Assembly: GCA_977020255.1 (NCBI GenBank) | Contig: CDROCS010002070.1 | Coordinates: forward strand, 1 to 64,000 | Direction of reading: 5' to 3' | DNA length: 64,000 nucleotides | From: Obrimoposthia wandeli | Lineage: Eukaryota | In this document: one piece after another, positions 2-38,922 of the stretch | Layout: each line of letters starts with the position of its first letter | How positions within the stretch are numbered: the first letter of the stretch is position 1 | The notes under the pieces: model-generated | The model's database searches: none | Seen by the model: the letters and a program-made list of their open reading frames with translations, nothing else | Told to the model about the DNA's origin: nothing | Program-made: the position numbers and the translations under genes

Positions 2-499
2 TTAGGTATTAATACCGTGTTTGATATCGATGCATGTGATGTTACACCCCCCGTTATTATTGGTAGTGGTTGTGATATTAGACCTGGCTGCACCATCGTT
101 GGTCCTGCAGTGATAGGGGCCAATTGTACCATCGAGACAGAGGCAGTGGTTAAACATAGTTTATTACGTGATTACATTCATATCGCGAGTGCCGCATACA
201 TAGAGAATAAAACCGTGTTTGGTGATTACTTTATTAGCCATGATGGATTCTCGCAATCGTTACTCGAAATGGGGGCGATTAACATCGTTAAAGATCGCCG
301 TGTAACGCAACACCCGATCCCTATTCGTAGTGACGTTGCCTTGTATATACCTCAGATCCGTGAGCAAATTAAGCAAGAAGCGCAGGAAAAGAATGAATCG
401 AATAATGCGCATGCCAATAGCGATGACTTAAACAGTAATAGCCAAAGTAAGGATAAATATAAGGAACTTATTGATGACGAACACTCAGCAGCTTTTTAA
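2..499 (+). CDS. C-terminal part of NDP-sugar pyrophosphorylase/nucleotidyltransferase-like protein with left-handed beta-helix repeats (5' end outside window)
   Basis: Frame open from base 2; hexapeptide-like repeats VIIGSG-CDIRPG-CTIVGP-AVIGAN-CTIETE; heads a glycan operon. Confidence 0.6.
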   Translation, partial: LGINTVFDIDACDVTPPVIIGSGCDIRPGCTIVGPAVIGANCTIETEAVVKHSLLRDYIHIASAAYIENKTVFGDYFISHDGFSQSLLEMGAINIVKDRRVTQHPIPIRSDVALYIPQIREQIKQEAQEKNESNNAHANSDDLNSNSQSKDKYKELIDDEHSAAF

Positions 500-930
500 G
501 CAAAACTATCAAAGCTCGGATGATGTCGCGAGAGTGATAGCGGAAGATATAAATGCTTTTGCTCTCGAAAATGACATCGAAGAAACTATCATGGGGCAGG
601 TTGAATTATGTATTGCAGAGTTAGTTAATAATGCTTACGAACATGCATATGAACTAACTGATGGTTGCCCAATTGAAGTTATCTGTTACTTAAAAGAGGA
701 TGCTGAATTAGTGATTGAGATTTCTGATTTTGGTCAACGCAGGATCGCAGTGCATTGCCAGCAGTGAATCCGAGTTTGCTAGGTCTGATCCGGATGGATG
801 GAGTCAACCCGGACCTACGATTCCAAGTGTGATTCTATTTATTATTGTTCAGCTAACCGATAGCCTTATTTATACTTGTGAAGATAATAAAAATACTTTT
901 GAATTTCACAAGAAATTGTGGACGCAGTAA
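471..930 (+). pseudogene. RsbW-like anti-sigma factor/Ser kinase (HATPase_c), frameshifted (probably sequence error)
   Basis: N-box ELCIAELVNNAYEHAY and G1-like IEISDFG in 471..767; C-terminal LFIIVQLTDSLIY..NTFEFHK in another frame (715..930). Confidence 0.7.
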
Positions 931-940
931 GAGGAACATC

Positions 941-3278
941 GTGAGCATAAAACTGCATTTTTTGTTTTTATTATTTAAACTATCTGAGCTTAGTTTACTT
1001 GGGTATGGCTGATTCTAAAATTATAGTAATGATGGTATCCTGAATGAGTTTAACTCACTTAACGGATTAAGTGAGTTCGAAATCAATCCTCGGATCGCCA
1101 TCAAATCCTCAACAACTCCTAATTCCTGATAATTGATGCGAACTCTAAATTGAATTCATCAACTCTGAAAAATTGACGCAAGCTCTGACAATAATCAATC
1201 TCGGTGGAAGCTTTCGGCGTGGCTCGCTGCCATTTCAGTACCAAATAATTGGTACAATGAAGGCGTCGACTATGCCGGTAAAGCTATTTATCGCCGCCAA
1301 TTCACACTGCCTAATGTGGCTCTATCGTCATCATTAACATCAGATCTAGTTAAACGTTATTGGCTGGATTTTACCGCGGTCGATTACGCGGCGACAGTGC
1401 GTTTAAATAATATCGATGTGGGTTCTCATCAAGGTTACTTTGCGCCATTTTCGTTAAACGTATCGAATGCGATTAATGGCGGAGATAATCAACTAGAAGT
1501 ATTAGTGGATAGCCCGAATGAAACACTAACCGAAGATTGGTCTTTAAATAAAACCTTAATTAAAGGCGTGCTTAATCATCATGACACTCGCCCGGGTGGC
1601 GCATGGTCTGACCGCGGTCAAGATCGTAATTCTGGTGGTATCTGGGGCGATGTTGCATTACGTACAACTGGCTTAATCGCGATTGATAATATTAAGGTAA
1701 AGGCGGAAGTGCTTGATGTGGATCTCCAGAAAACAGCGGGGCAGGTCGCTATTACGTTAGATAGCCTGTATGCGGGTGATGTGAGATTAGAATTTAAGTT
1801 AATTCGAATTCAGAGTAATAGCAGTGATTACCTTGATCACAATGATAAAAAGCAGGTGCTTGGTGATGAGCTTGAAACCTATAAATTGAGCACACAAGTA
1901 GTGACTGGCAAACAGGTTATTGATTGGCAGTTACCACAAGCGGGCGTTGCGGCCGTGGATTGGGGTAATCCGAATTTATACCAGCTTTCAGTACAAGTAA
2001 GCATGAATAAGGAAACATCCGATGGAAGTAAGCAAAATATCGGTTTTAGAAAAGTAGCTTTTGATGAAGGCCAAGGGGTTTTCTATATCAATGATCGTGC
2101 TTATTTTATTCGTGGTACTAATTATATTAGTCAATGGTTGGGCGGGGTAAGTGAACCTCCGATTATGCCAATGATATAAAGCCACGCGCAAGGCTAACAT
2201 CAACAGTATTCGCGTACATGCGCATGTAGCTGGAAAAGCATTTTATCAGCAAGCGGATAAACTTGGCATGATCGTGGCAAGATTTCCACTGCAATGGGGC
2301 TATATGATAGCGCTGAGCGAGCTGAAGCGGCATCACAAGTTAAAGATATGACAGACATGTTATATAACCATGCCTCTATTATGTTTTTTGGTGCAGTCAA
2401 ATGAACCGCCTTGGGATGCAACTTGATGCAATACAAATACCCGAGTTATAAACAGATAAAAATGTCGCGTTAACAGAGGCTGCCCACCAGCAGTTGCTTA
2501 CTGTGGGGCACGATGACAGGATCAGTGAAAGGCATCTTATACCGCTGAACACCCTTGGCTCGGCTGGTACTCTGGGCATTATAGTGATTATAGCCAGAAA
2601 CCGAAAACGGCGATTGTCAGTGAATTTGGTGCGCAAGCAATGCCAAGTTATAGCGCTGTGATCGAGATTTTGGGTGAAGTACCGACATGGCCGCTTTCAG
2701 CTAAGGTTATTGAGCAACTCAACTACCACAATTACCAACCTCGTGAAACCCTACAAATAGCCAAAATTGATGAAGGTGAATCTCTGTCACAATTCGTGAG
2801 TAATAGTCAGGAATATCAACGATTAATAACCAAGTCGGCAATCGAACAACTAAGATTAAATAAAGGGTCAGGATTGGCTGCAATTTATCAATTTATGTTT
2901 AACGATAGTTGGAATGCAATCACTTGGTCGGTACTTGATGTAGACCGTATTGCAAAACCTGGTTTTGTCGCTATGCAAACTGCTTATCAGCCGCTATTGG
3001 CAGTGTTAGAACGTGAAAATAGCAGCGCGAGTAAGTCGATAACTATCACTGTTATCAATGATAGTTTACGTGCTTATCAAGATGTAAAAATGCTGATTAG
3101 AGATAATGAAGATGGTGATACTTGGAGCATGCAGAGCATCGATATCGACGCAAATACCGCAAGTATTATTTTAAATAAACAGTTATTAGCAGGTTTATCT
3201 GATGCAGTGACGATAATTTTATATGACCAGCAAGATAATGAAGTAAGTAGAAATGACTATTTACCCCAAGACCGTTAG
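941..3278 (+). pseudogene. Glycoside hydrolase family 2 (beta-mannosidase/glucuronidase-like), multiply frameshifted
   Basis: GTG at 941 after GAGGA; fragments VPNNWYNEGVDYAGKAIYRRQF (from 1238), FYINDRAYFIRGTNY, DFPLQWGY (~2280), NHASIM/WCSQNEPPW (~2365-2415), IVSEFGAQ (~2613-2636) in different frames. Confidence 0.8.
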
Positions 3279-3287
3279 GAGATAGCT

Positions 3288-4951
3288 ATGGCAAGGATTG
3301 TCGTTGTTACATTATTAAGTTTAGCTTTTTCTAGTACCGCTATGAGCGAGCAGGACAGTAATCAACTCGTTGTTAATCAACTTGGCTATCTACCTAGCGG
3401 CGATAAAAAAGCCTATTGGTTAAACCCTTCTGAAGAATTAGTCAATTTAGTCACCATGGATACGGGAGGTGCAGAACGACTTGCAGGCAATGATACAAAA
3501 GAAAGTGAGGCAGGTGTTTTCAGTGTGACGATTGAATCTGGCTCTAAAGAAATTAATTTTTCTAATGTTAGCCAGCCTGGTTGGTATCAACTACAAAGTA
3601 AGTCGACGACCTCTGCACCGTTTCAAATCGCCGATAATGTTTATCAGGGACTGGCAGCTCGCCTTGTTAAAGCATTGTATTTACAACGTTCAGGCAGCGC
3701 AATTTTCGATCAAACAACAGGTATGAATCGACCACAAAGCCATGTTCAAGATGCAATTATTTTCCGCAGTGATGATTACCATCAAGCGGGAGAGCAATTA
3801 GATATGACGGTGGTTGGTGGCGACGCGGGGGATTACGGTAAATATGTTGCGACGACCACGATCACGGTTGCGCGTTTACTGGAAGCTTATAGTCAATCGC
3901 CAGCGTTATTTATGACGGGCAATCATGCCGACAGTACATTACCAGCCATATTGGAAGAAGCGATGGTGCGTTTGACTGGTTAGGTAAAATGCAGCGAGAA
4001 GATGGCTGTTTATCGCAAAGTATCAGGGCTAAATGGCCGGATGTCCCTTGGCAAGATCAGCAGGTTCGTTATATCTACGGTATTAGGCACGCCTGAAACG
4101 GCCAAATTTGCAGCAACGATGGCATTCGCCTCTCGTGGAAACCTGTGCGCCCAAATTTACGCGTGATTATTAAAGTCTATGATTCATGCTTGGCGCTATT
4201 TAGAGCAAACAGCCAGAACAATATATAGATTGGCAAAAAGGTGACGATAGTGGTTCAGGTCCTATATGTGCAAAATCCAGAAGACAGAAGCATCATTAGA
4301 AACGGATGTGATGACCGTTTATGGGCACTGGCAGAGTTATATTTAAGTACAAAACAAGCGCAAGTATTTAACTGAGTTTGATGATTTATACGATAAAGAC
4401 GGTGGCTATTTTTGAATGGAAAACCCGGCGTTAATGATCTCCATCTTATCGAATCTGTTGATAGCGAACTGACCGCGCAATTACGTAAAGATGTTGGGCA
4501 GGCTGCCAAACGTTATTCAGTATAAGCATTAGCTTTTGCCATTGCTAACCAACGTTTTATTTGGGGGTCAAATAAAATGACCGCTGAGGCTGGCGTGTTA
4601 ATGGCTGGTGCGGATGCCTCGTCACAGACACGTAATTACCGTGGTGTAGTGCAGTCACAGATTGATTATTTATTAGGTGCTAACGCATTTAACATGAGTT
4701 TTGTTACTCATACTGGCACTTATTCGGTGCGTAATCTGCATCATTTGTACCGGATAGCGACAGGTATTAGTCTCCCTGGTTTCTTAGTTGGTGGGCCGAA
4801 CGAAAAAGCACAAGCAGGGATTGCCCCGAAAGATGAAGGGATGATGAGTTATGTGGACAGTGAAAAATCATATGCAGTGAATGAATTTGCTATTGATTAT
4901 AACGCCAGCCTCATTGGTTTACTGGCTGTACACAATAGTTATTTTAATTAA
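3288..4951 (+). pseudogene. Exported glycoside hydrolase family 9 with N-terminal Ig-like domain, frameshifted
   Basis: AGGAG RBS, signal peptide, VVNQLGYLP, DAGDYGKY, and C-terminal GH9 motif YVDSEKSYAVNEFAIDYNASL; the middle is split over frames. Confidence 0.85.
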
Positions 4952-4972
4952 AGTTACTTGGAGCGAAAGAAG

Positions 4973-6823
4973 ATGGATTTTTATTTCAAAGAGTTCGAGC
5001 ATCGTAAGCCGCCAAAACCATCCGAGTATAGTTTTAGCCGAGAACTCGCTTATCAATATTTAGCGACTTGTAATCTGACCCTAGGTGTATGGTATTTGTG
5101 GTGGCGCTGGAGCTTTGCGTTAAATTATGATGCGTTGTGGTTTTCCCTGCCATTAGCTTTCGCTGAGTCTTGTGCATTTATTGGTTCGGTATTATTTACC
5201 TTTAACTTGTGGAAAACCCAAGACGAACCGAAACAATCACCGCCATTTAAACTCGCTGAATGTGTCACGGATACAGAAGAAGACCGACCTATTAGTGTTG
5301 ATGTTTTCTTTCCGACTTATGATGAAGATCCTGAACTGGTGCGCTTGAGTATTCGCGATGCGTTAAAGATTACTTATCCCTTTGAGATTGAAACTAAGAT
5401 ATACATTCTCGATGACGGTCGTCGTCCTGCTATGGCGGCGTTAGCTGCGGAATATAATGTTGAATATATTACCCGTGATAATAATGAAGGTTTTAAAGCC
5501 GGTAACCTTAAAAATGCATTAGAGCAAAGTTATGGCGATTTTATTGTTATTTGTGACGCTGATACTCGCCCATTCTCGACAATACTAGAACACACGCTTG
5601 GTTACTTCCGTGATCCTGATGTGGCCTGGGTACAAACACCACAATGGTTCTTTGACTTGCCTGAAGGACAGCGCTTACCTGATTGGTTACAAGGTAAAAT
5701 GGGCCGCGTAGGCCATGGGTTAGGTCGCTTAGTTGAAAAGTGCTATGGCCCTGTCACATTAGGCGAAGACCCGTTTGTTAACGACCCACAAATGTTTTAT
5801 GACGTGATCCAACGCCGCCGTAACTGGGTGAATGCCTCTTTCTGTTGTGGCGCCGGTTCTATCCACCGTCGTGAAGCCGTGATGGAAGCTGCACTACGAA
5901 GCTATAGCGCGCAGATCAGTCAGTCACAAGCAGATATTGAAAAGCAGATCCGTAAATTAACCAAAGAGAAAGAAGTCGATAAAGATATTTCGGCCAACTT
6001 ACGTCAAGAGATCTTGTTTGATACCGATTTTACCCCGTATAAGTTTCATGTATCAGAAGATATCTATACCTCGATTGTTTTACATTCCGATACCGAGCGT
6101 AATTGGCGTTCAGTACAGCATCCTGAAGTCGAAAGTAAAATGCTATCGCCACAAGATCTACAAACGTGGACAGTGCAGCGTTTCAAATATGCTGGTGGTT
6201 CGATTGATATCTTTATGAATGATAATCCGTTATTGAAAAAAGGCATGTCGTTCAAGCAGAAAACGATGTATTTAGCCAGTTTCTGGTCAAACTTGTCGGC
6301 CGTGTGGAACATTATTTTCCTACTTTGTCCTATCGTTTATTTCCTTACCAGCCTTGCACCAGTAAGTGCTTATGATACGACCTTCTATATGCACTTTTTA
6401 CCGTTTGTGATTACCGCTGAACTTGCGATGATGTTGGGTACTTGGGGAGTTGCAGGCTATAAAGGTAAAACCAATTTCTTGTCTTTCTTTCCGGTCAATC
6501 TACGGGCTTTATGGACAGTACTAAGAGGCCGTAAGATCAGCTTTCCAACGACACCGAAAGAACGTCAAACAGGCACTTTTTGGAAGTTAGTCGCGCCGCA
6601 AATCGGGGTGTTCGTATTAAGTTTATTCAGTATGTGTTTTGCCTGGATTAGCTATGTAACAGGCAGTTTTGGTAATTACTCGTTTGGCGGGTTAGTACTG
6701 AATAGTTTTTGGATCGTGAATAATATGATGGCAATGTGGGGCATGATTGCTGCCGCGTTTTGGACTCCACCAACAGAAAAAAAACAAGAACAAGAATCAG
6801 AGGGATTTGAATATGGCGTTTAA
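4973..6823 (+). CDS. BcsA-like processive GT2 glucan synthase, no C-terminal PilZ
   Basis: LDDG, FKAGN, CDAD, VQTPQ, FCCGAG, SED and QRFKY (QxxRW variant); N- and C-terminal TM helices; GGAG 9 nt before ATG 4973. Confidence 0.9.
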   Translation: MDFYFKEFEHRKPPKPSEYSFSRELAYQYLATCNLTLGVWYLWWRWSFALNYDALWFSLPLAFAESCAFIGSVLFTFNLWKTQDEPKQSPPFKLAECVTDTEEDRPISVDVFFPTYDEDPELVRLSIRDALKITYPFEIETKIYILDDGRRPAMAALAAEYNVEYITRDNNEGFKAGNLKNALEQSYGDFIVICDADTRPFSTILEHTLGYFRDPDVAWVQTPQWFFDLPEGQRLPDWLQGKMGRVGHGLGRLVEKCYGPVTLGEDPFVNDPQMFYDVIQRRRNWVNASFCCGAGSIHRREAVMEAALRSYSAQISQSQADIEKQIRKLTKEKEVDKDISANLRQEILFDTDFTPYKFHVSEDIYTSIVLHSDTERNWRSVQHPEVESKMLSPQDLQTWTVQRFKYAGGSIDIFMNDNPLLKKGMSFKQKTMYLASFWSNLSAVWNIIFLLCPIVYFLTSLAPVSAYDTTFYMHFLPFVITAELAMMLGTWGVAGYKGKTNFLSFFPVNLRALWTVLRGRKISFPTTPKERQTGTFWKLVAPQIGVFVLSLFSMCFAWISYVTGSFGNYSFGGLVLNSFWIVNNMMAMWGMIAAAFWTPPTEKKQEQESEGFEYGV

Positions 6824-8129
6824 ACAAAACTTAATTAAAGCGCGTCACCATTTTGTATTTATTGGTGGTCTAGTGACTGCGTTAGTCATTGCTTTTACAA
6901 TTGAAACTCGTGAGTACACGCAAGTATTAGGCAATCTATCTTTTACGACGAAAGAGCCTATTCCACTGCGTGAAAGCCGTATTTTAACCGCAGAAGAGTA
7001 TGAGTGGGCAAAGACTGCTTGGCGTTATTTTGATAATAATGTGCAGCCGAATACCGGACTGGTAAATTCTGTTGATGGTTATCCTTCGACCACTATGTGG
7101 GATACCGCATCTTATCTCATGGGGCTTATTGGCGCTGAAAAATTAAATATTGTTAGCCAAGCGGAATTTGATTTGAAAATGGAAAAAGTGCTGCACACAT
7201 TGGCTCGATTACCCTTGATCGAAGGCAAGCTACCAAATAAAGCTTATAACACAAAAACCCTTGAAATGGTGGATTATGCCAATAACCCAGTGCCTGATGG
7301 TATAGGCTGGTCTGCGATTGATATTGGCCGTATTTTGGTGCCATTAAATATTCTTATTTGGCAATACCCTGACTATAACAAACAGGTAAATGATGTACTG
7401 AATCACTGGCATGTTGGCAGCTTGATCGACAAAGGTTATTTGTATGGTTCTCGCCCAGCTAAAACAGGTGGTTTAGAGCTGGTGCAAGAAGGGCGAATTG
7501 GCTATGAAGAGTATGCTTCGAAAGCGCTATCGTTAATGGGTCTAGATGTATTTAATGCGATGAAATATATTGATTATTTAGAACTGATTAATATTGATGG
7601 TGTTGATATTCCAACTGATAGACGTGATCCGGCGAAGTACCATGCACATAACTATGTGGTCAGCGAATCATATATTTTAGATAGCTTAGAATTTGGTGCT
7701 GACAGTATTTCAGAAATCTTTGCCTATCGTGTTTATAAAGCACAAGAAAATCGTTACGAGCGCTCTGGTATTTTAACCGCGGTGAGTGAAGATAATGTAG
7801 ATGTCGCGCCTTATTTTGTCTATAACACAGTGTTTTCTGACGGTAAAGCATGGAATGCAATTTCAGATTCAGGGGAAGATGCGTCACATTTAAAAACATT
7901 ATCGACCAAAGCATCATTCGGTTGGTACGCCTTGTACGATACTGAGTATACAAGCCTGTTAATGGGTGATGTTAAAAGCTTGTATTCAGCACAAAAAGGT
8001 TGGTACTCAGGTCGTTACGAAAGTGATGGCCGTCTTAATAAAGCAATCACAGCAAATACCAATGGCATTATTTTAGAGTCTCTAGCTTACGTTCAAAATG
8101 GTACATTATTACGTGTTGGTGCGAGATAG
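6813..8129 (+). CDS. DUF3131-type putative glycoside hydrolase, N-terminal membrane anchor
   Basis: AKTAWRYF..N..TGLVNSV..YPSTTMWD, WSAIDIGR, QEGRIGYEEY, GWYSGRYE, NTNGIILE; ATG overlaps GT2 stop. Confidence 0.75.
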   Translation: MAFKQNLIKARHHFVFIGGLVTALVIAFTIETREYTQVLGNLSFTTKEPIPLRESRILTAEEYEWAKTAWRYFDNNVQPNTGLVNSVDGYPSTTMWDTASYLMGLIGAEKLNIVSQAEFDLKMEKVLHTLARLPLIEGKLPNKAYNTKTLEMVDYANNPVPDGIGWSAIDIGRILVPLNILIWQYPDYNKQVNDVLNHWHVGSLIDKGYLYGSRPAKTGGLELVQEGRIGYEEYASKALSLMGLDVFNAMKYIDYLELINIDGVDIPTDRRDPAKYHAHNYVVSESYILDSLEFGADSISEIFAYRVYKAQENRYERSGILTAVSEDNVDVAPYFVYNTVFSDGKAWNAISDSGEDASHLKTLSTKASFGWYALYDTEYTSLLMGDVKSLYSAQKGWYSGRYESDGRLNKAITANTNGIILESLAYVQNGTLLRVGAR

Positions 8130-8153
8130 TTTGCATATCACAGGGAGTTTTAT

Positions 8154-9540
8154 ATGCGGATAGCGATGGTTTGCCTGGCAGGGTTACTGGTCTCTGGTTG
8201 TGGCAGTAAATATAATAGTTTTTCAGAAGACATCGTTGATAGAAAAAATCATTGGTCAATTCCACCTGCAAGACAAGGCGATTTGACCGAAAAAGAAATG
8301 GACATGGCGCGTATCGCATGGCGATATTTTGAGAATAATTACCAAGAGTCTACGGGTTTGGTGAATGCGGTAAATAATTACCCATCAGTAACATGGTGGG
8401 ATGCGGCTTCCTATTTAGCGGGTATGACGAGCGCACTCGAACTCGGTATTATCAAAAAAGAAGAATATGATCGCCGTCTGATCCGTTTTATTACTACATT
8501 AAATACAATGGATTTATTCCGTAATGAAATGCCAAACAAAGCCTACAATACGCAAAGCGCTGTGAAAGTAGATTATGCCAATCAGCCGGGTGAAATTGGT
8601 TATTCAGCATTGGATTTAGGCCGTTTGTTAATTTGGCTGCATTTAATTAAAAATCGTTATCCTGAATACGCTACGGGTATCGATTCTGCGGTATTACGTT
8701 GGAATTTTTGTAATATTGTTGATGAAGATGGCTTGATGTTTGGTGCATTATTAGAGCCAGGTAAACCTGTTCAGTATTTGCAAGAAGGCCGCTTAGGTTA
8801 TGAAGAATACGCGGCTAAAGGCTTCCAGTTATGGGGCTTTGATACGAAAACAGCGTCAATGCCTGAACCCTATAATACCATTAACTTATTTGGTTATGAC
8901 GTACCTTACGATACCGTGATCCCACGTAACAGCAGCACACAGTTGGGCCGTGGTAACTGAAAGTTATGTGCTTGATGGTATCGAATTAGGTTGGGATTTG
9001 TCGACAGACCATTCCGGACCAGATACCTCCTATTCAAATGGTTGGATGGCTGAATTTGCGCTGCAGATTTATCGTGTTCAAGAAGCCAGATATGAAGCAA
9101 CGGGTATTATTACTGCACGTACCGAACACCAGTTAGCGAGTGCGCCTTATTTTGTCTATGACACGCTTTATACAGATGGTTATGCTTGGAATACGATATC
9201 CGAAAACGGTGAATACTTACCACAATACTCAGCGGTAGCAGTGAAAGGTGCTATGGGTCTTTGGGCATTATGGGATACGGAATATACAGATCTATTGTTT
9301 GATCACACTTCTCATCTTTATGACCGTGAAAAAGGCTTTTATGAAGGTATCTTTGAGAACGGTACTGGTTTAATTAATACTTTCACATCAAATAATAACG
9401 GTATTTTACTGGAAATATTATTGTTTAAAAAACAAGGTAAATTGATGCGTTACCAAAATAAGCCATTACCAAGTTTATGGGATAAAGCATTAGAATCACC
9501 ATTTGGTTATGAGGGAAAGTGCTTACCTCGTAAAATCTAA
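8154..9540 (+). pseudogene. DUF3131-type lipoprotein paralog 2, frameshifted near 8915-8950 (probably sequence error)
   Basis: Lipobox LVSG-C; AWRYF, TWWD, QEGRLGYEEY in 8154..8960; continuation VTESY..GFYEG..NNNGILLE in 8950..9540. Confidence 0.75.
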
Positions 9541-9572
9541 CATATGGTGGCTGACTTAAGGAATGAGTGTCA

Positions 9573-10955
9573 ATGTTGAGCAAACTAATGATGGCATGCT
9601 CTGCAGTATTATTAACCTCATGCGGGGTTGTGTACCAAAGTGTGGAAGAGGGGATCACATCATTTAGTGCATCGCAAGTTATCCGTCAGGGGCGCTTCGG
9701 TGCATTAAGTGAAGACGAGATGCAGTGGGCGCAAACGGCTTGGCTCTACGTAGAGAATAATACCCAACTAAAAACCGGCTTGGTCAATTCTCTGGACAAT
9801 TATCCGAGTACCAATATGAGCGCGATTGCTGATTATTTAATTGCGTTGATGGCTGCTCAAGAGTTCGAATTGATCACCAGTAAAGAGCATGATGAACGCT
9901 TGTCACTGGTCATTAGCTTTTTAGTCGAAATGCCTTTAAGCCAATTATCAGTGCCTAATATCGCCTATTCCACAAGTACGGGACAGATGGTGGATTATGG
10001 CATGCAACCGAATGATATTGGTTGGTCATCTGTGGATGTCGGTCGATTATTAATTGCGTTAGCACTGGTTAAGCAGCGTAATCAAGAATTTTCAGAATAC
10101 GTAGATAAAGCGGTATTACGGTGGAATTTTTGTGAACTGGTAAATGAAGAAGGTTCACTGTTTGGCGGCTCTATTGTTAACGGTCAGCCACAGCGTTTTC
10201 AAGAAGGGCGTTTAGGCGTAGAAGAATATAGTTCATACGGTTATCTCGACTGGCAAATCGTGCCAGCCAAAAGTATGCGAGTAGATCCTTATGATGTCGC
10301 TACTATTAATGGTATTGATTTACTGTTTGATGGCCGCGACCCTCGTCACTACAACGTATTAAGACCGGTGATGAGCACTCCTTATTTACAGCTTGGCTTA
10401 GAGTTTAATTGGGATGGCATTACTGATACCGGTTCTTTGGATAGTTACCATTCTGATGAAGTGCTCTCGGCAATGGCTGATGCTGTTTACCGCGTGCAAG
10501 AGTCACGTTGGGATGAAGAACGTATTTACACGGCGCGTGGTGATCATGTCGTCGAAGGCGAACCTTATTTTGTCTATGACAGTATCTATGCTTTAGGTAC
10601 GCCGTGGTTAACCGTTGCTGAAGACGGCAATGTTTATGATGAACTGGCGTTAGTGTCTACCCGTGTAGCCTTTCAAATGTGGGCATTGTGGAAGACAGAT
10701 TATACCGACCGCCTGATGGTTTTAGTCAGGGAGTTATATGATCCTGCGCGGGGTTGGTATGAAGGTCGTTACGAATTAAACGCGAGTTATGAAAAGAGTA
10801 TTACGCTAAAAACCAATGCCGGTGTACTTGAGGCACTATTGTATAAAGCCAACGGTAAATTATATCAGCCAGGCAAAGCTAAAGAACACCGAGATGTACG
10901 TTTTAGCTCTCGCTTTAATCACCCTGGAAAATGTCATGTGGAGACATTTCAATGA
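9573..10955 (+). CDS. DUF3131-type lipoprotein paralog 3
   Basis: Lipobox LLTS-C; AQTAWLYV, TGLVNS, WSSVDVGR, QEGRLGVEEY, GWYEGRYE, TNAGVLE. Confidence 0.75.
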   Translation: MLSKLMMACSAVLLTSCGVVYQSVEEGITSFSASQVIRQGRFGALSEDEMQWAQTAWLYVENNTQLKTGLVNSLDNYPSTNMSAIADYLIALMAAQEFELITSKEHDERLSLVISFLVEMPLSQLSVPNIAYSTSTGQMVDYGMQPNDIGWSSVDVGRLLIALALVKQRNQEFSEYVDKAVLRWNFCELVNEEGSLFGGSIVNGQPQRFQEGRLGVEEYSSYGYLDWQIVPAKSMRVDPYDVATINGIDLLFDGRDPRHYNVLRPVMSTPYLQLGLEFNWDGITDTGSLDSYHSDEVLSAMADAVYRVQESRWDEERIYTARGDHVVEGEPYFVYDSIYALGTPWLTVAEDGNVYDELALVSTRVAFQMWALWKTDYTDRLMVLVRELYDPARGWYEGRYELNASYEKSITLKTNAGVLEALLYKANGKLYQPGKAKEHRDVRFSSRFNHPGKCHVETFQ

Positions 10956-12049
10956 TAAAAATAAGCTGGCAAGCACTGGTTATATCTTGCTGTTGTTACC
11001 AAGTTAGCGCGTACGCTCAGCCGGTGAATATGGAGTTAAAGTATTACAGTAAAGCCAGTCATTATCTTAGCCAAGGTAAGTATAAGTTGGCGGCGAATCA
11101 GTGGCATCAATTAAGCTTGGTATTTTTACGCTCTGAAGCTAAGTTAGGCAATCGTCATATGTGGCAATACGCAGGATTAGCTGAAGCGCTTGCTGCTATG
11201 TCTGCAGATAAAGCTAATGATGTTATCGCTTATCAGTATTGGGCGGATAGTGGTCGCTATTTAATGACGGGAGGGACGAATTGGCCTTTAGTGCAAAAAC
11301 AGTTGCATCAACGATTTGAAACCACCAATACGCAGTTATCTGCATTTATGCAGGTTAATGATCTTGCCGGCAATGACTCTGATAAATGGCAGCAAGAGTT
11401 GTCTATTTTACAGACTTGGAATGATAAATTGGCGGTTTTCACATTTAGCTCGCCTAAGCTCGGACTCAGTGGCAAGCGCAATGTTGTTGACGTTAACCAG
11501 CAGCAACCTATCGTTAATTATAAAGGCGTATTTCAACCAAATAAGAAATTGTCAGGCTTAGGGACTGCCACGTTTAGGGGCAATCAAATTACCCCTGTAG
11601 TGACTCCGAGTGAAGTCAAAGATCCTATCTCAGAAAATAACAGTGTTAAGACTAAGGCGAGTATTTCAAAGGTCGCTGAGTCAGGTTTATCACAACCCGT
11701 CGATACTAATACTATGAAGCTTAATACACCAAACTCTGACCCGACCGGTTCAGATATACCTGTCGCAGACTTATCGCTACCGATTGATATAAACGTGCCT
11801 GCCGTAGAGCATGATCCGCTCGTTGAGGTTAACGAGATAGAACCTAAAAGTAATGTTAAAGCGGTATTAAAACCGACGCCAAAGGTGGAGGTCGAGAAGG
11901 AGAGAAAAAAGGAGATAGGGAAGGAGATAGTGAAGGAGGCTAATCCTGTGCAGGACAACCCGCTTTTCAGAGGTAATATAGCCCCCATAAAAGATGAAAA
12001 TATTGAATATTTACAACGTCGTAGCTTTGATCCAGTAATTCAAGAATAA
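10952..12049 (+). CDS. Exported hypothetical protein: helical (TPR-like) N-domain and low-complexity Pro/Val/Glu/Lys tail
   Basis: ATGA overlap with upstream stop; signal-like ..VSAYA; long uninterrupted ORF. Confidence 0.6.
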   Translation: MIKISWQALVISCCCYQVSAYAQPVNMELKYYSKASHYLSQGKYKLAANQWHQLSLVFLRSEAKLGNRHMWQYAGLAEALAAMSADKANDVIAYQYWADSGRYLMTGGTNWPLVQKQLHQRFETTNTQLSAFMQVNDLAGNDSDKWQQELSILQTWNDKLAVFTFSSPKLGLSGKRNVVDVNQQQPIVNYKGVFQPNKKLSGLGTATFRGNQITPVVTPSEVKDPISENNSVKTKASISKVAESGLSQPVDTNTMKLNTPNSDPTGSDIPVADLSLPIDINVPAVEHDPLVEVNEIEPKSNVKAVLKPTPKVEVEKERKKEIGKEIVKEANPVQDNPLFRGNIAPIKDENIEYLQRRSFDPVIQE

Positions 12050-12152
12050 AGTCGATGCACTTCAAACTTTGACACTAACCTTGTGTCTGTTCGTTATCCA
12101 AATACTACCTTTATTATGAAACCCAAGGATCTATGATAATAAAGGATTAGCG

Positions 12153-13412
12153 ATGAAAACGTCACATGAACTAGTGCAACAAGTACTGCTAAATTCAAGC
12201 AACGAGTTTGATTTAACCGAAGCTTTACATCAAAAAAGTCTCTTGAGTTTAGCCAATACACTGTATTGTTTAAGAGATATCCCGACTACTTATTATCAAC
12301 AATTAGTAAGAGAGAACGATTGCCCGCTGGAGTTTCGTTTAGCGATTAAGCTGGTGGAATCTAAGCGCTATTTATTGACAGTATCTAAGCCTGTGACGGT
12401 TGGTGTCGTTTTTGCTATGTGGGGCGAACATCACCGTCTGTTACAAAAAAGTAGTGATAACCCTCATGGTGAAGACTCGCTAAATGTCAAAATTAATCAG
12501 CTCAATTGGATCACCAATGGTACGCCTGTAAGCTGGCATCTTTATCCTGTTGACGATGGTTGTCCGCATGCCAGTGCTAGTATTGCCAGCAGTATATTAG
12601 CTGACCATCCTGATAGAAACACTGTGTCAGTATTGCGCTTAGCGGATGTAGTCCCTGCAGCGACAGGACCCCTGCAAAATTTAAAACATGTGGATGATTC
12701 ACGCAAGGGCGGGGCGATTGTTTACGGTTGTCAGCGAGCGCTTGCTAATGACGTTGACTGTGTTGTTTATACCGACGCTGATAATTCAGTACATCTTGGC
12801 CAACTTGGATTGTTGTTAAAGCCATTCTTATCTGAAAATTATGACGTCATATTAGGTAATCGTAAGCACGCAGATTCGATCTTGGTCAAGCAGGAAGAGC
12901 GTTGGGGTGTTGGTATTAAAACCTTACGTCACATGCAGCGCATGATAGGTCAGCAGATATTTAGCCAAGGCATTAAAGATACGCAAGCTGCGTTCAAGCT
13001 TTATAGTCGTGATGTATTAACTCAGATTATGGCGTCGCCGACGGTATATGATTTCTCGTTCGATACCGATTGGATTTTAGCGGCAATGGAGCTGGAAGCA
13101 GAGATTATCACTGTACCATTCGCCTTTATCGACTCCGCGGCTGAATCAGCCTCAATTGTGCAAGGACCTATGACGACTTGGTTTACCTTGCTTGATGGTC
13201 TGATTAAAGCGGTAAGAGTGCGCAATGCAGTACACAATCAAGAGATGGCTGCTGTATTTGAGCAGCAAGTGTTATCGCATGAAGTACTTGAGAGGATAAT
13301 TGATACTTTACCACACGCTTTGGCTGACACGCCTGACTCTCAGTTGGGCGATCCTAATGTTATGTCACCAGCAGAAATTGAAGGGTGGCTAAAAGAGGTG
13401 CAAGCTGCTTAA
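12153..13412 (+). CDS. GT2 glycosyltransferase, polyprenol/dolichol-phosphate glucosyltransferase (ALG5)-like
   Basis: RKGGA, YTDADNS (DxD), DTQAAFKLY, FSFDTDW resemble ALG5-type motifs; AGGA RBS. Confidence 0.72.
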   Translation: MKTSHELVQQVLLNSSNEFDLTEALHQKSLLSLANTLYCLRDIPTTYYQQLVRENDCPLEFRLAIKLVESKRYLLTVSKPVTVGVVFAMWGEHHRLLQKSSDNPHGEDSLNVKINQLNWITNGTPVSWHLYPVDDGCPHASASIASSILADHPDRNTVSVLRLADVVPAATGPLQNLKHVDDSRKGGAIVYGCQRALANDVDCVVYTDADNSVHLGQLGLLLKPFLSENYDVILGNRKHADSILVKQEERWGVGIKTLRHMQRMIGQQIFSQGIKDTQAAFKLYSRDVLTQIMASPTVYDFSFDTDWILAAMELEAEIITVPFAFIDSAAESASIVQGPMTTWFTLLDGLIKAVRVRNAVHNQEMAAVFEQQVLSHEVLERIIDTLPHALADTPDSQLGDPNVMSPAEIEGWLKEVQAA

Positions 13413-13435: not shown

Positions 13436-13479
13436 AAAATCTCATACATGCTTTAGTTAAAAGGGCGTGTTGAGATTTT
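13436..13479. terminator. Long imperfect hairpin between convergent genes (possible bidirectional terminator)
   Basis: AAAATCTCA / TGAGATTTT arms plus inner G-U-containing pairing. Confidence 0.45.
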
Positions 13480-13869
13480 TTAGTTAATGTTCAATGCAAT
13501 CCTTTCGATCAGTTTTATTTCTCGATTAAATGCCACGGCAAGTAATTGATTATCAGGTTCCCAGCGAATCACTGATACAGGGATCACGTCGGTAAAATAA
13601 TTATCAAATTCCAAAATTAGATCCTCACCAATAGTGAATTTACCTTTGGTTGTTACTTTTGCAAGTAACCCTGATTCAGATATATTCTCAACTTCAATTG
13701 TAATCCTGAAAAAGTCAAAAATACCGAGTTTGTTCACATATAATACCGGGTGTTTCTTCCAATAATTAAATCTAGCGTGCTGGCGATTAAGTTTGAAAGA
13801 GAGATCTTTTTTGACACTAAACATCGTATATCCGTATGGTGATTTGAAGTTGTAAACTAGCCTCGACAT
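13480..13869 (-). CDS. Stand-alone PilZ-domain protein (c-di-GMP receptor-like)
   Basis: RQHAR (RxxxR) followed by NISESG ([D/N]xSxxG) and beta-rich C-terminus. Confidence 0.65.
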   Translation of the reverse strand: MSRLVYNFKSPYGYTMFSVKKDLSFKLNRQHARFNYWKKHPVLYVNKLGIFDFFRITIEVENISESGLLAKVTTKGKFTIGEDLILEFDNYFTDVIPVSVIRWEPDNQLLAVAFNREIKLIERIALNIN

Positions 13870-15959: not shown

Positions 15960-16496
15960 CTAAAAAGCAAATCTTACGCCTATACCAGCGATTGAAGAGT
16001 CCACATCGGTATCAAATACCAGGTATTCTGCATAAATATCAATTGTATCTAAAACATCGATACTGGCACCAATACCGCCGAACACCTCTTCGCCATCAGC
16101 ATCACTTTTTAATGAGCCTTTTTCAATATCAATATTAACAAAAGCGACACCTAATTTTGCATAAACCTCAAAAAATGGACCTATTGGTAAGTAACCAACA
16201 CCTGCTAGCGTAAAGGCTGATGCATCAATGTCATAATTAGTACTTGCTACAGTGCCACTATAACCACCAAGGTCGTAATAACCCAGTTCGGCAGCAACCA
16301 TAAAAACATTCGAGTCGATGAGGGTATATCCGACGAATAAACCAGGTACAACGTCGTCGTCATCGAAGCCACCTTCTTCTACATTGGCCTGATACACACC
16401 AGCACCAATATACAAACCATCTGCATGCGCCAGAGAAGGGCTGTTGGCCGCGAGGATAAAGGTGGTCATTGCTATTAATTGAGGGAATTTGTTCAT
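15960..16496 (-). CDS. Outer-membrane 8-stranded beta-barrel (OmpA-like/porin family)
   Basis: AGGAG RBS before ATG 16496; signal peptide; GLYIGAG, AELGYYDLG, C-terminal GIGVRFAF. Confidence 0.82.
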   Translation of the reverse strand: MNKFPQLIAMTTFILAANSPSLAHADGLYIGAGVYQANVEEGGFDDDDVVPGLFVGYTLIDSNVFMVAAELGYYDLGGYSGTVASTNYDIDASAFTLAGVGYLPIGPFFEVYAKLGVAFVNIDIEKGSLKSDADGEEVFGGIGASIDVLDTIDIYAEYLVFDTDVDSSIAGIGVRFAF

Positions 16497-16804
16497 GTAA
16501 GCTCCTGTCGATATATCGACTTTAATTACGTTAGTCTTCCAAAACCTCTTACAAGCATTACGTGTCGGTACTATTTTAATGACTCGAAATAAGCTATCTA
16601 CCGCCACATACATTACATAAAGCTAGACGCTATATTTATTTGCGCCAACTTTCCTTTCACTTCATTTTAGTGAAAAATGATGGATATAGATTATTTATAT
16701 GTGATTGAATAGGGGGGAGTAGGGTCAGGTATGACGGGATCATCATGCAGCTATTCGCATTACTTAGGGGGATTAAGATGCGTGGTTTAGACTGTGGACA
16801 GAAG

Positions 16805-37200: not shown

Positions 37201-37388
37201 TCTTCAACTACTTGTGGCGCTTGTCCTGGATAACTGGTTTTAATGATCACCTGTACATCGGAGAGATCTGGGATCGCGTCGATCGGGGTATTTTTGACTA
37301 CAAAGCTACCGTAGACAATAATAATAAAGGTCGCTAACAAGACTAGCATCCGATTGTGGATCGACCATTCAATAATGCGTTTGATCAT
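34221..37388 (-). CDS. cusA: CusA-family Cu/Ag heavy-metal RND efflux pump
   Basis: [73 protein letters not shown]. Confidence 0.95.
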
Positions 37389-38914: not shown

Positions 38915-38922
38915 GAAAACCT

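What the first reader, a model, noticed from the sequence alone, without database searches (positions are those of the whole stretch)
471..13412. Unusual glucan operon: BcsA-like GT2 with three DUF3131 proteins, GH9, GH2, ALG5-like GT and a partner-switching kinase, but no BcsB/BcsC
Seen: ten co-oriented, tightly spaced genes, with no bcsB, bcsC, bcsZ, Wzx/Wzy or ABC exporter in view. Recollection to verify: DUF3131 (alpha/alpha)6 proteins include beta-1,2-glucanases related to GH144/GH162 and to the cyclising domain of cyclic beta-1,2-glucan synthase. Inference: a split system making periplasmic or surface beta-1,2-, mixed-linkage or cyclic glucan, trimmed by envelope-anchored enzymes and controlled by RsbW/STAS switching, rather than cellulose.
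Basis: partly seen in the sequence, partly recalled or inferred. Interest (0 to 1): 0.72.

Follow-up and report, generated by a model that had tools for sequence, protein, structure and literature searches.

The report
Half-decayed copy of uncharacterised glucan operon
This is a partly broken copy of a widespread but never-studied bacterial gene cluster that most likely builds a glucose polymer in the cell envelope, using a cellulose-synthase-like enzyme together with membrane-tethered enzymes that fold like beta-1,2-glucan cutters and cyclases.

Summary
Intact are the BcsA-like GT2, DUF3131 #1 and #3, a 372-aa secreted protein and a second GT-A transferase.

The window comes from a Photobacterium-like Vibrionaceae. 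All 80 loci fetched from other genomes, spanning several phyla, carry this GT2. About 73-78 of them also carry DUF3131 genes (about three per locus), a response-regulator-PP2C phosphatase, a STAS protein and the kinase. GH2 (39 loci) and GH9 (25 loci) are optional.

An operon-encoded enzyme closely matches a solved UDP-glucose pyrophosphorylase, so the product is probably a glucan. [quoted passage not shown] One DUF3131 protein is inner-membrane anchored and two are lipoproteins. No BcsB, BcsC or PilZ domain accompanies the synthase.

The linkage remains undetermined, and GH9 and GH16 neighbours argue for beta-1,4 or beta-1,3 bonds. I found no published characterisation.

The parts
2..499 (+). 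3' end of the operon's sugar-1-phosphate nucleotidyltransferase gene (left-handed beta-helix C-terminal domain). The gene runs off the left edge of the window and is apparently intact in the part seen.
   Evidence: Pfam Hexapep/LbH. 66% identical to residues 266-382 of the P. profundum orthologue, with no stops. The full orthologue matches PDB 8x7s UTP--glucose-1-phosphate uridylyltransferase at E=6e-127.
474..912 (+). RsbW/SpoIIAB-like serine kinase (HATPase_c_2), a pseudogene. Residues 1-88 are in one frame (474-737) and residues 110-146 in another (787-912). The glycine-rich ATP-lid region is lost.
   Evidence: Pfam HATPase_c_2 covers only profile positions 9-81 of 127. The tblastn alignment to the intact 150-aa orthologue splits into two frames.
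1139..3275 (+). GH2 glycoside hydrolase pseudogene. The orthologue is a 732-aa lipoprotein.
   Evidence: Pfam GH2 domains are found on fragments only. Two overlapping tblastn segments lie in different frames at 42-51% identity, with 11 stop codons. The lipoprotein signal of the orthologue is shown.
3288..4948 (+). GH9 endoglucanase-type pseudogene with a CelD_N Ig-like domain. The orthologue is a 567-aa secreted protein.
   Evidence: Pfam CelD_N plus the GH9 N-terminus on 3288-3983, and the GH9 C-terminus on 4577-4951. 12 stop codons across two frames, 41-47% identity.
4973..6823 (+). BcsA-like processive GT2 synthase-translocase, 616 aa from the ATG (ORF listing starts it at the TTG at 4958, 621 aa), intact. 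It has two N-terminal and about four C-terminal membrane helices, no PilZ domain, QRFKY in place of QxxRW, and an insertion of about 45 aa before the SED motif (spacing of 69 residues; the BcsA spacing it is compared with is recalled, not measured).
   Evidence: Pfam/NCBIfam: CelA 213 bits, far below the 699 cut-off. PDB BcsA at E=5e-38. Motifs and their invariance in 81 sequences. 85% identical to P. profundum.
6813..8129 (+). DUF3131 #1 (D1), 438 aa, intact. It has an N-terminal membrane anchor and a periplasmic (alpha/alpha)6 barrel. Its start overlaps the GT2 stop by 11 nt.
   Evidence: Pfam DUF3131 at E=3e-145. Transmembrane segment at residues 10-28. AlphaFold pLDDT 92.4. The fold matches are all in the beta-1,2-glucanase clan. 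The GT2-D1 overlap is seen in 60 of 78 loci.
8154..9540 (+). DUF3131 #2 (D2), a lipoprotein and a pseudogene. It is split into ORFs 8154-8960 and 8950-9540 by several small indels at about 8915-8950, over the invariant D-x-R-D-P-R motif.
   Evidence: The Pfam DUF3131 halves cover profile positions 2-213 and 219-367. The two tblastn pieces are 80-82% identical and lie in different frames. DNA alignment to five orthologues. Lipobox LVSGC.
9567..10955 (+). DUF3131 #3 (D3), a lipoprotein, intact.
   Evidence: Pfam DUF3131 at E=9e-97. Lipobox LLTSC. 74% identical to the orthologue with no stops. It keeps all family-invariant acidic residues.
10931..12049 (+). 372-aa secreted protein of unknown family, intact and fast-evolving. 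It is found only in Vibrionaceae and Shewanella versions of the operon.
   Evidence: No Pfam, NCBIfam or PDB match, even with a profile. Signal peptide. 27-59% identity among orthologues.
12153..13412 (+). Second glycosyltransferase (GT-A fold, GT2-like), 419 aa, intact, predicted cytoplasmic.
   Evidence: Partial Pfam Glycos_transf_2 match. DDG and DAD motifs invariant in 30 orthologues. AlphaFold pLDDT 88.6. The nearest folds are ArnC, GtrB, dolichyl-phosphate-mannose synthase, and glucosyl- or mannosyl-3-phosphoglycerate synthases, at TM 0.4-0.45.
13446..13470 (+). Terminator-like hairpin just after the last gene; a possible operon end.
   Evidence: Consensus scan. The number of such sites in the region is not above chance, so this is weak evidence.

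Best explanation
The stretch is a locally decayed copy of a conserved, experimentally uncharacterised, synthase-dependent beta-glucan system of Gram-negative bacteria.

In the intact form, a dedicated UDP-glucose pyrophosphorylase feeds a BcsA-like GT2. The GT2 polymerises glucose and threads the chain across the inner membrane. The chain emerges next to a translationally coupled, membrane-anchored DUF3131 enzyme (D1) and two DUF3131 lipoproteins (D2, D3). These are (alpha/alpha)6 barrels of the beta-1,2-glucanase / cyclic-glucan-synthase-cyclase clan. They would cut, transglycosylate or cyclise the polymer in the periplasm. The logic resembles OpgH/OpgG, but with different protein families.

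A response-regulator-PP2C phosphatase, a STAS protein and an RsbW-like kinase form a partner switch with no sigma factor nearby. It probably acts on the synthase or on precursor supply after translation. GH2, GH9 or GH16 hydrolases are optional, lineage-specific trimmers.

In this genome the kinase, GH2, GH9 and D2 are pseudogenes. The GT2, D1, D3, the 372-aa protein and the second transferase are intact.

Shown: gene content, decay, synteny, motifs, membrane topology signals, folds, and the UDP-glucose pyrophosphorylase match. Inferred: that the polymer is a glucan, that the DUF3131 proteins act on it in the periplasm, the target of the switch, and the linkage, for which beta-1,2 is my leading single guess at about one in three.
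For: - Conserved synteny of GT2, D1-D3, RR-PP2C, STAS and kinase across Vibrionaceae, Shewanella, Ferrimonas, Thiotrichales, Methylococcales, Rhodobacterales, Desulfobacterales, Calditrichaceae and Enterobacterales plasmids.
- The operon's nucleotidyltransferase matches PDB 8x7s UTP--glucose-1-phosphate uridylyltransferase at E=6e-127.
- The GT2 keeps the DDG, DAD, QTPQWF, FCCGAGS and SED motifs and a gating-loop-like F-x-T-T-P-K, all invariant in 81 sequences. BcsA is its nearest solved relative.
- GT2 and D1 overlap by 4-14 nt in most loci.
- D1 has a transmembrane anchor, D2 and D3 have lipoboxes, and the GH2, GH9 and 372-aa proteins have signal peptides.
- The D1 model has pLDDT 92, and its top 20 PDB fold matches are all beta-1,2-glucanases or the cyclic-glucan-synthase cyclase domain.
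- Seven acidic residues are invariant or nearly so in all three paralogue groups, which argues for enzymes rather than scaffolds.
- The STAS orthologues carry DSSG in 56 of 74 cases.
- Related clusters contain an OpgC-type acyltransferase: Acyl_transf_3, and the Klebsiella block 3b in PMC12974863.
- The Shewanella piezotolerans DUF3131 genes form a co-expression module in salt-shock data (PMC8371737).
- The intact window genes are as similar to P. profundum as are those of other Photobacterium species.
Against: - No product has been analysed for any member of the family.
- The sequence link of DUF3131 to GH189 covers only about 60 residues. Fold TM-scores are 0.54-0.62 at 10-16% identity.
- I could not map the clan's defining Glu/Phe/Tyr or the GH189 nucleophile by superposition.
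- GH9 (usually beta-1,4) and GH16 (usually beta-1,3 or beta-1,3-1,4) in some versions, and the BcsA-like synthase itself, fit a non-beta-1,2 polymer.
- A conserved candidate outer-membrane barrel in 54 of 80 relatives suggests export rather than periplasmic retention.
- In this genome four genes are dead, so the remaining ones may also be on the way out.
Confidence: 0.6

Rival explanations
1. The system makes a secreted cellulose-like (beta-1,4) or mixed-linkage (beta-1,3/1,4) exopolysaccharide for biofilm. The DUF3131 proteins serve as periplasmic guides or trimmers, taking the roles of BcsB and BcsZ. The conserved upstream barrel protein serves as the outer-membrane pore.
For: - BcsA is the closest characterised relative of the GT2, and the gating-loop-like motif is retained.
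- GH9 is part of the intact Photobacterium operon, and GH16 sits inside the operon in 13 Vibrio loci.
- A protein of about 335 aa is conserved in 54 of 80 loci. It has a signal peptide, a C-terminal aromatic residue and weak similarity to the outer-membrane phospholipase A barrel.
- Partner-switch control of biofilm polysaccharides has precedent in SypA/SypE of Vibrio fischeri (PMC3610818, PMC10120452, listed).
Against: - QxxRW is replaced by QRFKY in every member.
- There is no BcsB, BcsC, PilZ or HlyD-type partner.
- GH9, GH2 and GH16 are absent from many loci, whereas DUF3131 is in 78 of 80.
- Every characterised enzyme among the best fold matches of DUF3131 acts on beta-1,2-glucan. A few top matches are uncharacterised 'putative glucoamylases'.
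- The barrel assignment rests on sub-threshold Pfam hits and no structure.
Confidence: 0.3
2. In this genome the whole locus is non-functional and eroding. The intact genes are simply the ones not yet hit, and nothing is made.
For: - Four of nine genes are pseudogenes, including a universal core component (the kinase) and one of the three DUF3131 genes.
- GH2 and GH9 are down to 41-51% identity with many stops, so the decay is old.
Against: - GT2, D1, D3 and the second transferase have no stops. They keep every family-invariant residue and are 70-85% identical to P. profundum, the same range as functional orthologues in other Photobacterium species.
- GH2 and GH9 are dispensable in many relatives.
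- Loss of an inhibitory kinase could instead lock the system on.
- This rival is not exclusive of the main explanation, which concerns what the system is.
Confidence: 0.3
3. The apparent pseudogenes are sequencing or assembly errors, and the operon is intact.
For: On its own, the D2 break could have passed for an assembly error: it splits the gene into just two ORFs, and the flanking sequence is 80-82% identical to orthologues.
Against: - GH2 and GH9 carry 11 and 12 stops and far lower identity than their neighbours.
- The D2 lesion is several separate indels within 40 nt, not in a homopolymer.
- The kinase has lost its glycine-rich motif as well as its frame.
- The remaining 50 kb of the window has long uninterrupted ORFs of up to 1556 aa.
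Confidence: 0.03

Closest known systems
Bacterial cellulose synthase BcsA-BcsB-BcsZ-BcsC
   Same: An inner-membrane processive GT2 with the D, DxD, (T/S)ED and Q-x-x-(R/K)-(W/Y) motifs, an FxVTxK-like loop and a QTPxxF motif. BcsA is the best PDB and NCBIfam match. The intact operon includes a secreted endoglucanase-type hydrolase.
   Different: - No BcsB, no BcsC, and no C-terminal PilZ domain.
- QRFKY instead of QxxRW in all 81 members.
- The CelA model scores 213 bits against a cut-off of 699.
- The hydrolase is GH9, not GH8, and is optional.
- The obligatory partners are DUF3131 barrels.
[quoted passage not shown]
   Same: DUF3131 is the only part of the operon with a detectable sequence link to it: profile E=3e-5 to PDB 8wy1 and 0.014 to 8rf9/8rf0. 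It has the same (alpha/alpha)6 fold, TM about 0.62. The synthase and a cyclase-like module are encoded together.
   Different: - In Cgs the domains are fused in one cytoplasmic giant and the product leaves by an ABC exporter. Here the barrels are separate and face the periplasm, and the synthase is a channel-forming GT2, not GT84.
- There is no GH94 length-control domain.
- The match covers only about 60 residues, and the catalytic nucleophile was not mapped.
OpgH/OpgG(/OpgD/OpgC) osmoregulated periplasmic glucan pathway
   Same: The same logic: a membrane GT2 uses UDP-glucose and exports the chain, and periplasmic glucan-active enzymes shape it. OpgC-type acyltransferases occur in some related clusters. 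There is a salt-shock co-expression hint in Shewanella.
   Different: No OpgH or OpgG homology was detected. OpgG/OpgD are GH186 and not (alpha/alpha)6 barrels. The OPG genes are not known to be paired with a partner switch.
Beta-1,2-glucanase clan GH-S (GH144, GH162, GH192, GH193, GH194; Nakajima et al. 2025, PMC12102758)
   Same: The fold: the top 20 PDB matches are members of this clan or GH189. Some of those enzymes come from Photobacterium.
   Different: - No pairwise sequence match to any solved member.
- Within its main text (supplementary data not examined), that paper does not use the name DUF3131 and none of its named groups is identified with it.
- No activity is known, and the clan-defining residues are unmapped.
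Partner-switching control of polysaccharide or biofilm output (SypE/SypA of Vibrio fischeri; HsbR/HsbA and SiaABC of Pseudomonas)
   Same: A STAS protein with DSSG, a PP2C phosphatase fused to a receiver domain, and an RsbW-type kinase, encoded with polysaccharide genes and with no sigma factor alongside.
   Different: The kinase, phosphatase and receiver are arranged differently: SypE fuses all three. The regulated machinery is also different. In this window the kinase gene is dead and the other two genes lie off the left edge.

Membership tests
Bcs cellulose synthase operon | BcsA catalytic subunit reaching the family model's score, with a QxxRW motif | tested here: not met
   TIGR03030 CelA scores 213 bits against a cut-off of 699. 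The motif is QRFKY, invariant in 81 sequences.
Bcs cellulose synthase operon | C-terminal PilZ domain on the synthase (c-di-GMP gate) | tested here: not met
   No PilZ hit on the GT2, and the protein ends shortly after its last membrane helix. A separate small PilZ ORF at 13480-13869 on the minus strand has no counterpart (tblastn E<=1e-3) in any of the 80 fetched loci.
Bcs cellulose synthase operon | BcsB periplasmic partner and BcsC outer-membrane/TPR subunit | tested here: not met
   None in the window. None among the recurrent neighbour clusters that were scanned against Pfam.
Pfam PF11329 DUF3131 | Score above the gathering threshold over the whole model | tested here: met
   484, 325, and 255 plus 131 bits, against a cut-off of 20.3.
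Beta-1,2-glucanase clan (GH-S) / GH189 | (alpha/alpha)6 barrel fold superposable on clan members | tested here: met
   The model has pLDDT 92.4. [quoted passage not shown]
Beta-1,2-glucanase clan (GH-S) / GH189 | Clan-defining Glu, Phe and Tyr (E239, F286, Y367 of XcSGL; PMC12102758), and the GH189 nucleophile (E1442) and acid/base (E1356; PMC10834661) | tested here: inconclusive
   DUF3131 has invariant or near-invariant E226, E232, D269, Y287, E293, D297, Y337, Y379 and E403 in all paralogues. Their spacing is compatible with the clan residues. No residue-level superposition was available, so no mapping is claimed.
Beta-1,2-glucanase clan (GH-S) / GH189 | Hydrolysis or transglycosylation of beta-1,2-glucan | not testable with these tools
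   This needs an enzyme assay.
Beta-1,2-glucanase clan (GH-S) / GH189 | Significant sequence similarity to a CAZy family member | tested here: inconclusive
   The single-sequence search gives only 8wy1 at E=0.009. The profile gives 8wy1 at E=3e-5 and 8rf9/8rf0 at 0.014, over about 60 residues. There are no hits to GH144, GH162, GH192 or GH194 entries.
RsbU/RsbV/RsbW-type partner-switching module | STAS antagonist with a phosphorylatable serine, a PP2C phosphatase and a HATPase_c_2 kinase encoded together | tested here: met
   Met in relatives: SpoIIE plus receiver, STAS (TIGR00377 at 64.7 bits against a cut-off of 53.45) and HATPase_c_2. DSSG is present in 56 of 74 STAS orthologues. In the window only the kinase is visible, and it is a pseudogene.
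RsbU/RsbV/RsbW-type partner-switching module | A cognate sigma factor as the kinase's second partner | tested here: not met
   No sigma factor gene was identified among the recurrent neighbour clusters of the 80 loci that were scanned against Pfam.
UDP-glucose pyrophosphorylase of the 8x7s type | Full-length close similarity to a solved enzyme of that name | tested here: met
   The P. profundum orthologue against 8x7s: E=6e-127 over residues 1-367. The window holds only the last ~117 conserved residues (plus a species-variable C-terminal tail), 66% identical to that orthologue. Substrate specificity itself was not assayed.
OpgGH osmoregulated periplasmic glucan system | OpgH and OpgG/OpgD homologues | tested here: not met
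   No OpgH or OpgG family hit for any operon protein in Pfam or NCBIfam. The resemblance is in logic only.
Polyprenyl-phosphate glycosyltransferases (ALG5/DPM1/GtrB/ArnC) | GT-A domain plus a C-terminal membrane hairpin and juxtamembrane helices | tested here: inconclusive
   The best fold matches include ArnC, GtrB and dolichyl-phosphate-mannose synthase, but at TM 0.34-0.45 with rmsd 13-15 A. Soluble glucosyl- or mannosyl-3-phosphoglycerate synthases fit with lower rmsd, 5-6 A. There is only one weak hydrophobic segment and no profile hit in the PDB.

The most novel reading that the evidence does not exclude
The family is a previously unrecognised route to periplasmic, possibly cyclic, beta-1,2-type glucans. 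A cellulose-synthase-like GT2 with a QRFKY acceptor motif extrudes the chain to periplasmic, membrane-tethered relatives of the cyclic-glucan-synthase cyclase domain. In effect this is a 'split, inside-out' cyclic glucan synthase. It would be switched on and off after translation by a sigma-less STAS/PP2C/kinase partner switch fed by two-component signals, and in some lineages by gas-sensor signals.
Probability: 0.3. Interest if true: 0.8.

Novelty: new variant of a known kind. Interest (0 to 1): 0.6.

Why it matters
Envelope glucans affect osmoadaptation, envelope signalling, symbiosis and virulence. Only a few biosynthetic routes are known: OpgGH, Cgs/NdvB, NdvB/C, Bcs, Crd and Bgs.

This cluster occurs in many marine Vibrionaceae and Shewanella, in sulfur and methane oxidisers, and on large plasmids of Pantoea and Salmonella. 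A similar accessory gene block is reported in Klebsiella pneumoniae. I found only passing mentions of it in the literature.

If the DUF3131 proteins act on the synthase's product, three things follow. DUF3131 becomes a new glycoside hydrolase or transglycosylase family. A cellulose-synthase-type channel becomes linked to beta-1,2-clan enzymes. And it adds a case of a partner switch apparently controlling a polysaccharide synthase without a sigma factor.

The window's own copy adds one observation. The GH2, GH9, kinase and one DUF3131 gene can be lost while the synthase, D1 and D3 are kept.

Tried and rejected
- I first guessed a pseudogene-rich cyanobacterium from GC content and DUF3131. This was rejected when the GT2 matched Photobacterium at 85%.
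- I expected the three DUF3131 proteins to be orthologues of PgSGL1-3 from Photobacterium gaetbulicola. This was rejected: there is no sequence match to the solved PgSGL3 or EeSGL1, and those genes sit at unrelated locus tags.
- Profile searches of the PDB with the second transferase (A2), the 372-aa protein (A3) and the candidate barrel (A4) gave nothing.
- The small PilZ ORF downstream was tested as a detached c-di-GMP receptor. It has no counterpart in any of the 80 fetched loci, so I do not count it as part of the system.
- The promoter and terminator scans are at chance level.
- Literature searches for the cluster under several term sets found only passing mentions.
- Not done: the large protein searches. 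The family scans and the genome scan answered the questions, and no claim here rests on absence of relatives.
- Not done: residue-level superposition of the D1 model on 8wy1, 5gzk or 8xuj, because model coordinates are not exposed.

Full report
**What is in the sequence**

Between 1 and 13.4 kb every sizeable ORF lies on the + strand. Pfam assigns them as follows:
- a left-handed beta-helix tail of a nucleotidyltransferase, 17-499
- a truncated HATPase_c_2 kinase, 471-767
- GH2 fragments
- GH9 fragments: CelD_N plus the GH9 N-terminus at 3288-3983, and the GH9 C-terminus at 4577-4951
- a BcsA-like GT2, 4958-6823
- DUF3131 on four ORFs: 6747-8129, 8154-8960, 8950-9540 and 9567-10955
- a 372-aa ORF with no family
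- a GT2-like ORF, 12153-13412

There are no N runs. The fragmentation shows that several 'genes' are not intact.

**Origin and intact reference**

A scan of one genome per species with the GT2 returned 80 loci. The closest are Photobacterium profundum and P. frigidiphilum at 85% amino-acid identity. Next come other Photobacterium, Aliivibrio, Vibrio, Shewanella and Ferrimonas. More distant are Thiotrichales, Methylococcales, Rhodobacterales, Desulfobacterales, a Calditrichaceae genome and others at 57-64%.

In P. profundum the operon is intact, in this order:
1. receiver-PP2C (SpoIIE) phosphatase
2. STAS antagonist
3. NTP-transferase with a beta-helix tail
4. HATPase_c_2 kinase
5. GH2 (732 aa)
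6. GH9 (567 aa)
7. GT2 (616 aa)
8. three DUF3131 genes
9. a 365-aa unknown
10. a 425-aa GT2-like protein

**Decay in the window**

I aligned those twelve proteins to the window by tblastn.

| Gene | Identity to P. profundum | State |
|---|---|---|
| GT2 | 85% | intact |
| D1 | 81% | intact |
| D3 | 74% | intact |
| second transferase | 70% | intact |
| 372-aa protein | 39% | intact, fast-evolving |
| kinase | 50% and 43% | two frames |
| GH2 | 42-51% | two frames, 11 stops |
| GH9 | 41-47% | two frames, 12 stops |
| D2 | 80-82% | two frames |

The kinase loses its frame after residue 88, and its glycine-rich motif is gone. The D2 break is several small indels within about 40 nt, lying exactly over the invariant D-x-R-D-P-R motif and not in a homopolymer.

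The other 50 kb of the window carries long intact genes: glutamate synthase (1556 aa), an RND efflux pump (1055 aa), an ammonium transporter and others. The decay is therefore local and real, not a sequencing artefact.

The visible part of the nucleotidyltransferase is intact. Its longer C-terminal tail falls in a region that varies between species.

**What is core and what is optional**

Gene-by-gene mapping and all-against-all clustering of ORFs over the 80 loci give these counts:

| Component | Loci (of 80) |
|---|---|
| GT2 | 80 |
| DUF3131 | 78 (234 copies, about three per locus) |
| kinase | 74 |
| RR-PP2C | 73 |
| nucleotidyltransferase | 59 |
| second transferase | 52 |
| 365-aa protein | 51 |
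| GH2 | 39 |
| GH9 | 25 |

- STAS is present wherever the PP2C is; the short ORFs are undercounted by the clustering.
- Many Vibrio and Shewanella operons have neither GH2 nor GH9.
- Thirteen Vibrio loci instead carry a GH16 gene between the unknown protein and the second transferase.
- The D1, D2 and D3 orthologue groups are recognisable as far out as Desulfobacterales and Calditrichaceae. The triplication is therefore old and maintained.
- The two classical hydrolases lost in the window are the dispensable ones. The kinase and D2 are not.

**The synthase**

BcsA is the nearest solved and curated relative, at E=5e-38 in the PDB. The CelA model scores 213 bits against a cut-off of 699.

- The protein has the motifs YDE, LDDG, KAGN, CDADT, QTPQWF, FCCGAGS, SED and a gating-loop-like F-P-T-T-P-K.
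- Where BcsA, chitin, hyaluronan and Nod-factor synthases have QxxRW, it has QRFKY. All these positions are invariant or nearly so in 81 sequences.
- It has about six membrane helices and no PilZ domain.
- The spacing between FCCGAGS and SED is 69 residues, which I take to be an insertion of about 45 residues. My figure for the BcsA spacing is recalled, not measured here.
- Its stop overlaps the D1 start by 4-14 nt in 58 of 78 loci, and in 60 counting two longer overlaps, 11 nt in the window. This suggests a 1:1 complex.

**The substrate**

The P. profundum nucleotidyltransferase matches PDB 8x7s, deposited as UTP--glucose-1-phosphate uridylyltransferase, at E=6e-127 over 367 residues. All other nucleotidyltransferases are far weaker. 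A dedicated UDP-glucose supply inside the operon is the best available evidence that the polymer is a glucan.

I suspect this is the CugP type described in cyanobacteria. That is recollection and I did not verify it.

**The DUF3131 proteins**

*Topology.* D1 has an N-terminal membrane anchor. D2 and D3 have lipoprotein signal peptides. The GH2 orthologue is a lipoprotein, and GH9 and the unknown protein have signal peptides. All of these face the periplasm.

*Fold.* A 69-sequence alignment gave an AlphaFold model of D1 with mean pLDDT 92.4. Its 20 best PDB matches are exclusively the following (E of 7e-11 to 2e-6, TM 0.54-0.62, 10-16% identity):
- beta-1,2-glucanases of GH192 (EeSGL1), GH144, GH194 (PgSGL3) and GH162

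Other six-hairpin enzymes, such as BcsZ, glucoamylases and GH8, come much lower.

*Sequence.* By sequence, only the cyclase domain is detected: single sequence E=0.009, profile E=3e-5, over about 60 residues. A Brucella transcriptome table lists BMEI1837 as 'DUF3131 domain-containing'. I recall BMEI1837 as the cgs gene, but did not verify that.

*Conserved residues.* Seven acidic residues and several aromatic residues are invariant or nearly so in all paralogue groups. These are D170, E226, E232, D269, E293, D297 and E403 in D1 numbering. This pattern argues for three active enzymes with the same chemistry and different tethering.

*Limits.* I could not map these residues onto the clan-defining Glu/Phe/Tyr (PMC12102758) or the GH189 catalytic pair E1356/E1442 (PMC10834661), because no superposition output is available. 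The beta-1,2-glucanase paper never uses the name DUF3131, and its Photobacterium enzymes are unrelated in sequence and location.

**Other components**

The second transferase is a confident GT-A model (pLDDT 88.6) with invariant DDG and DAD motifs. Its nearest folds are polyprenyl-phosphate transferases (ArnC, GtrB, dolichyl-phosphate-mannose synthase) and, with better rmsd, soluble glucosyl- or mannosyl-3-phosphoglycerate synthases, all at TM 0.45 or below. 'ALG5-like' is therefore only loosely supported.

The 372-aa protein has no detectable relatives in Pfam, NCBIfam or the PDB.

Just beyond the window's left edge, 54 of 80 relatives encode a protein of about 335 aa, usually divergent from the PP2C gene. 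It has a signal peptide, an internal duplication, a C-terminal aromatic residue and sub-threshold similarity to the outer-membrane phospholipase A barrel. It is a candidate outer-membrane component, so 'no exporter in view' is partly a consequence of where the window starts.

**Regulation**

The STAS orthologues carry the phosphorylatable DSSG motif in 56 of 74 cases. The kinase has the RsbW/SpoIIAB-type N-box. The phosphatase is fused to a receiver domain.

None of the recurrent neighbour clusters scanned against Pfam is a sigma factor. The switch therefore probably acts on a non-sigma target, as reported for SypA/SypE and HsbA (papers listed). The target here is unknown.

Some lineages add hybrid histidine kinases, an H-NOX protein, a YgbA_NO protein or a globin next to the module.

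In the window the kinase is dead. If the kinase is the inhibitory arm, as in classical switches, its loss would leave the STAS protein unphosphorylated. This is inference only.

**Literature**

I found no functional study. Three passing mentions fit the picture:
- a DUF3131 co-expression module in Shewanella piezotolerans salt-shock data (PMC8371737)
- RefSeq annotation of the same cluster on Pantoea stewartii plasmid pDSJ10, and matches on Salmonella, Paracoccus and Nostoc plasmids

**Verdict**

- it is a glucan system
- it is not a Bcs operon
- its enzymes are anchored in the envelope
- it is under partner-switch control

The link between DUF3131 and beta-1,2-glucan enzymes is now backed by fold and profile evidence.

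The linkage and the fate of the polymer remain open. Two lines of evidence pull in different directions. The near-universal DUF3131 partners point to beta-1,2 chemistry. The BcsA-like synthase and the optional GH9 and GH16 point to beta-1,4 or beta-1,3 bonds.

As a family this is an unstudied variant of synthase-dependent glucan systems and worth an experiment. This particular copy is a degraded example, and an intact orthologue would be the better subject.

Nothing here concerns a toxin, an effector or human sequence.

Noticed in passing
window 13480-13869 (- strand): A small stand-alone PilZ-domain ORF (129 aa, Pfam E=7e-5) lies convergent with the operon's last gene. It has no counterpart in any of the 80 related loci.
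   Followed up: partly
window 14424-15653 (+): A 409-aa protein with an N-terminal TerD domain. It is followed on the opposite strand by an OmpA-like beta-barrel gene (15960-16613) and hflX (16843-18198).
   Followed up: no
window 49583-52273 and 53257-55944 (+): Two tandem paralogous proteins of about 895 aa, each an Fe-S / FAD pyridine-nucleotide oxidoreductase. They sit directly upstream of glutamate synthase large and small subunit genes (56188-60858, 60879-62369).
   Followed up: no
window 34221-40179 (- strand): A CusCBA-type heavy-metal RND efflux operon: AcrB-family pump, HlyD-type adaptor with heavy-metal-binding domains, and an outer-membrane factor. It lies in a stretch of higher GC, 0.45-0.47 against about 0.40 elsewhere.
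   Followed up: no
L001:1632-2654 (- strand) and 53 other loci: A conserved protein of about 335 aa with a signal peptide, an internal duplication, a C-terminal aromatic residue and weak similarity to the outer-membrane phospholipase A barrel. It is encoded next to the PP2C gene and is a candidate outer-membrane partner of the system. It lies off the left edge of the window.
   Followed up: partly
L023:17058-17852 (+) and 12 other Vibrio loci: A GH16 gene is inserted inside the operon, between the unknown protein and the second transferase, in Vibrio versions that lack GH2 and GH9.
   Followed up: partly
L057:3226-3765, L026:700-1095, L081:16069-16503: Gas-sensor-type genes sit beside the partner-switch or two-component genes of the cluster in some lineages: H-NOX in Thiothrix-like genomes, YgbA_NO in Shewanella, and a globin on Pantoea plasmid pDSJ10.
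   Followed up: no
L014:386-5242 (- strand) and 17 other Vibrio-type loci: A very large RTX-repeat protein of about 1600 aa, with 61 nonapeptide-repeat matches, lies a few kb upstream of the cluster. No link to the operon is evident.
   Followed up: no
window 4973-6823, residues 402-406 of the GT2: QRFKY replaces the QxxRW acceptor-binding motif of processive GT2 synthases and is invariant in 81 family members. Its consequence for linkage is unknown.
   Followed up: partly
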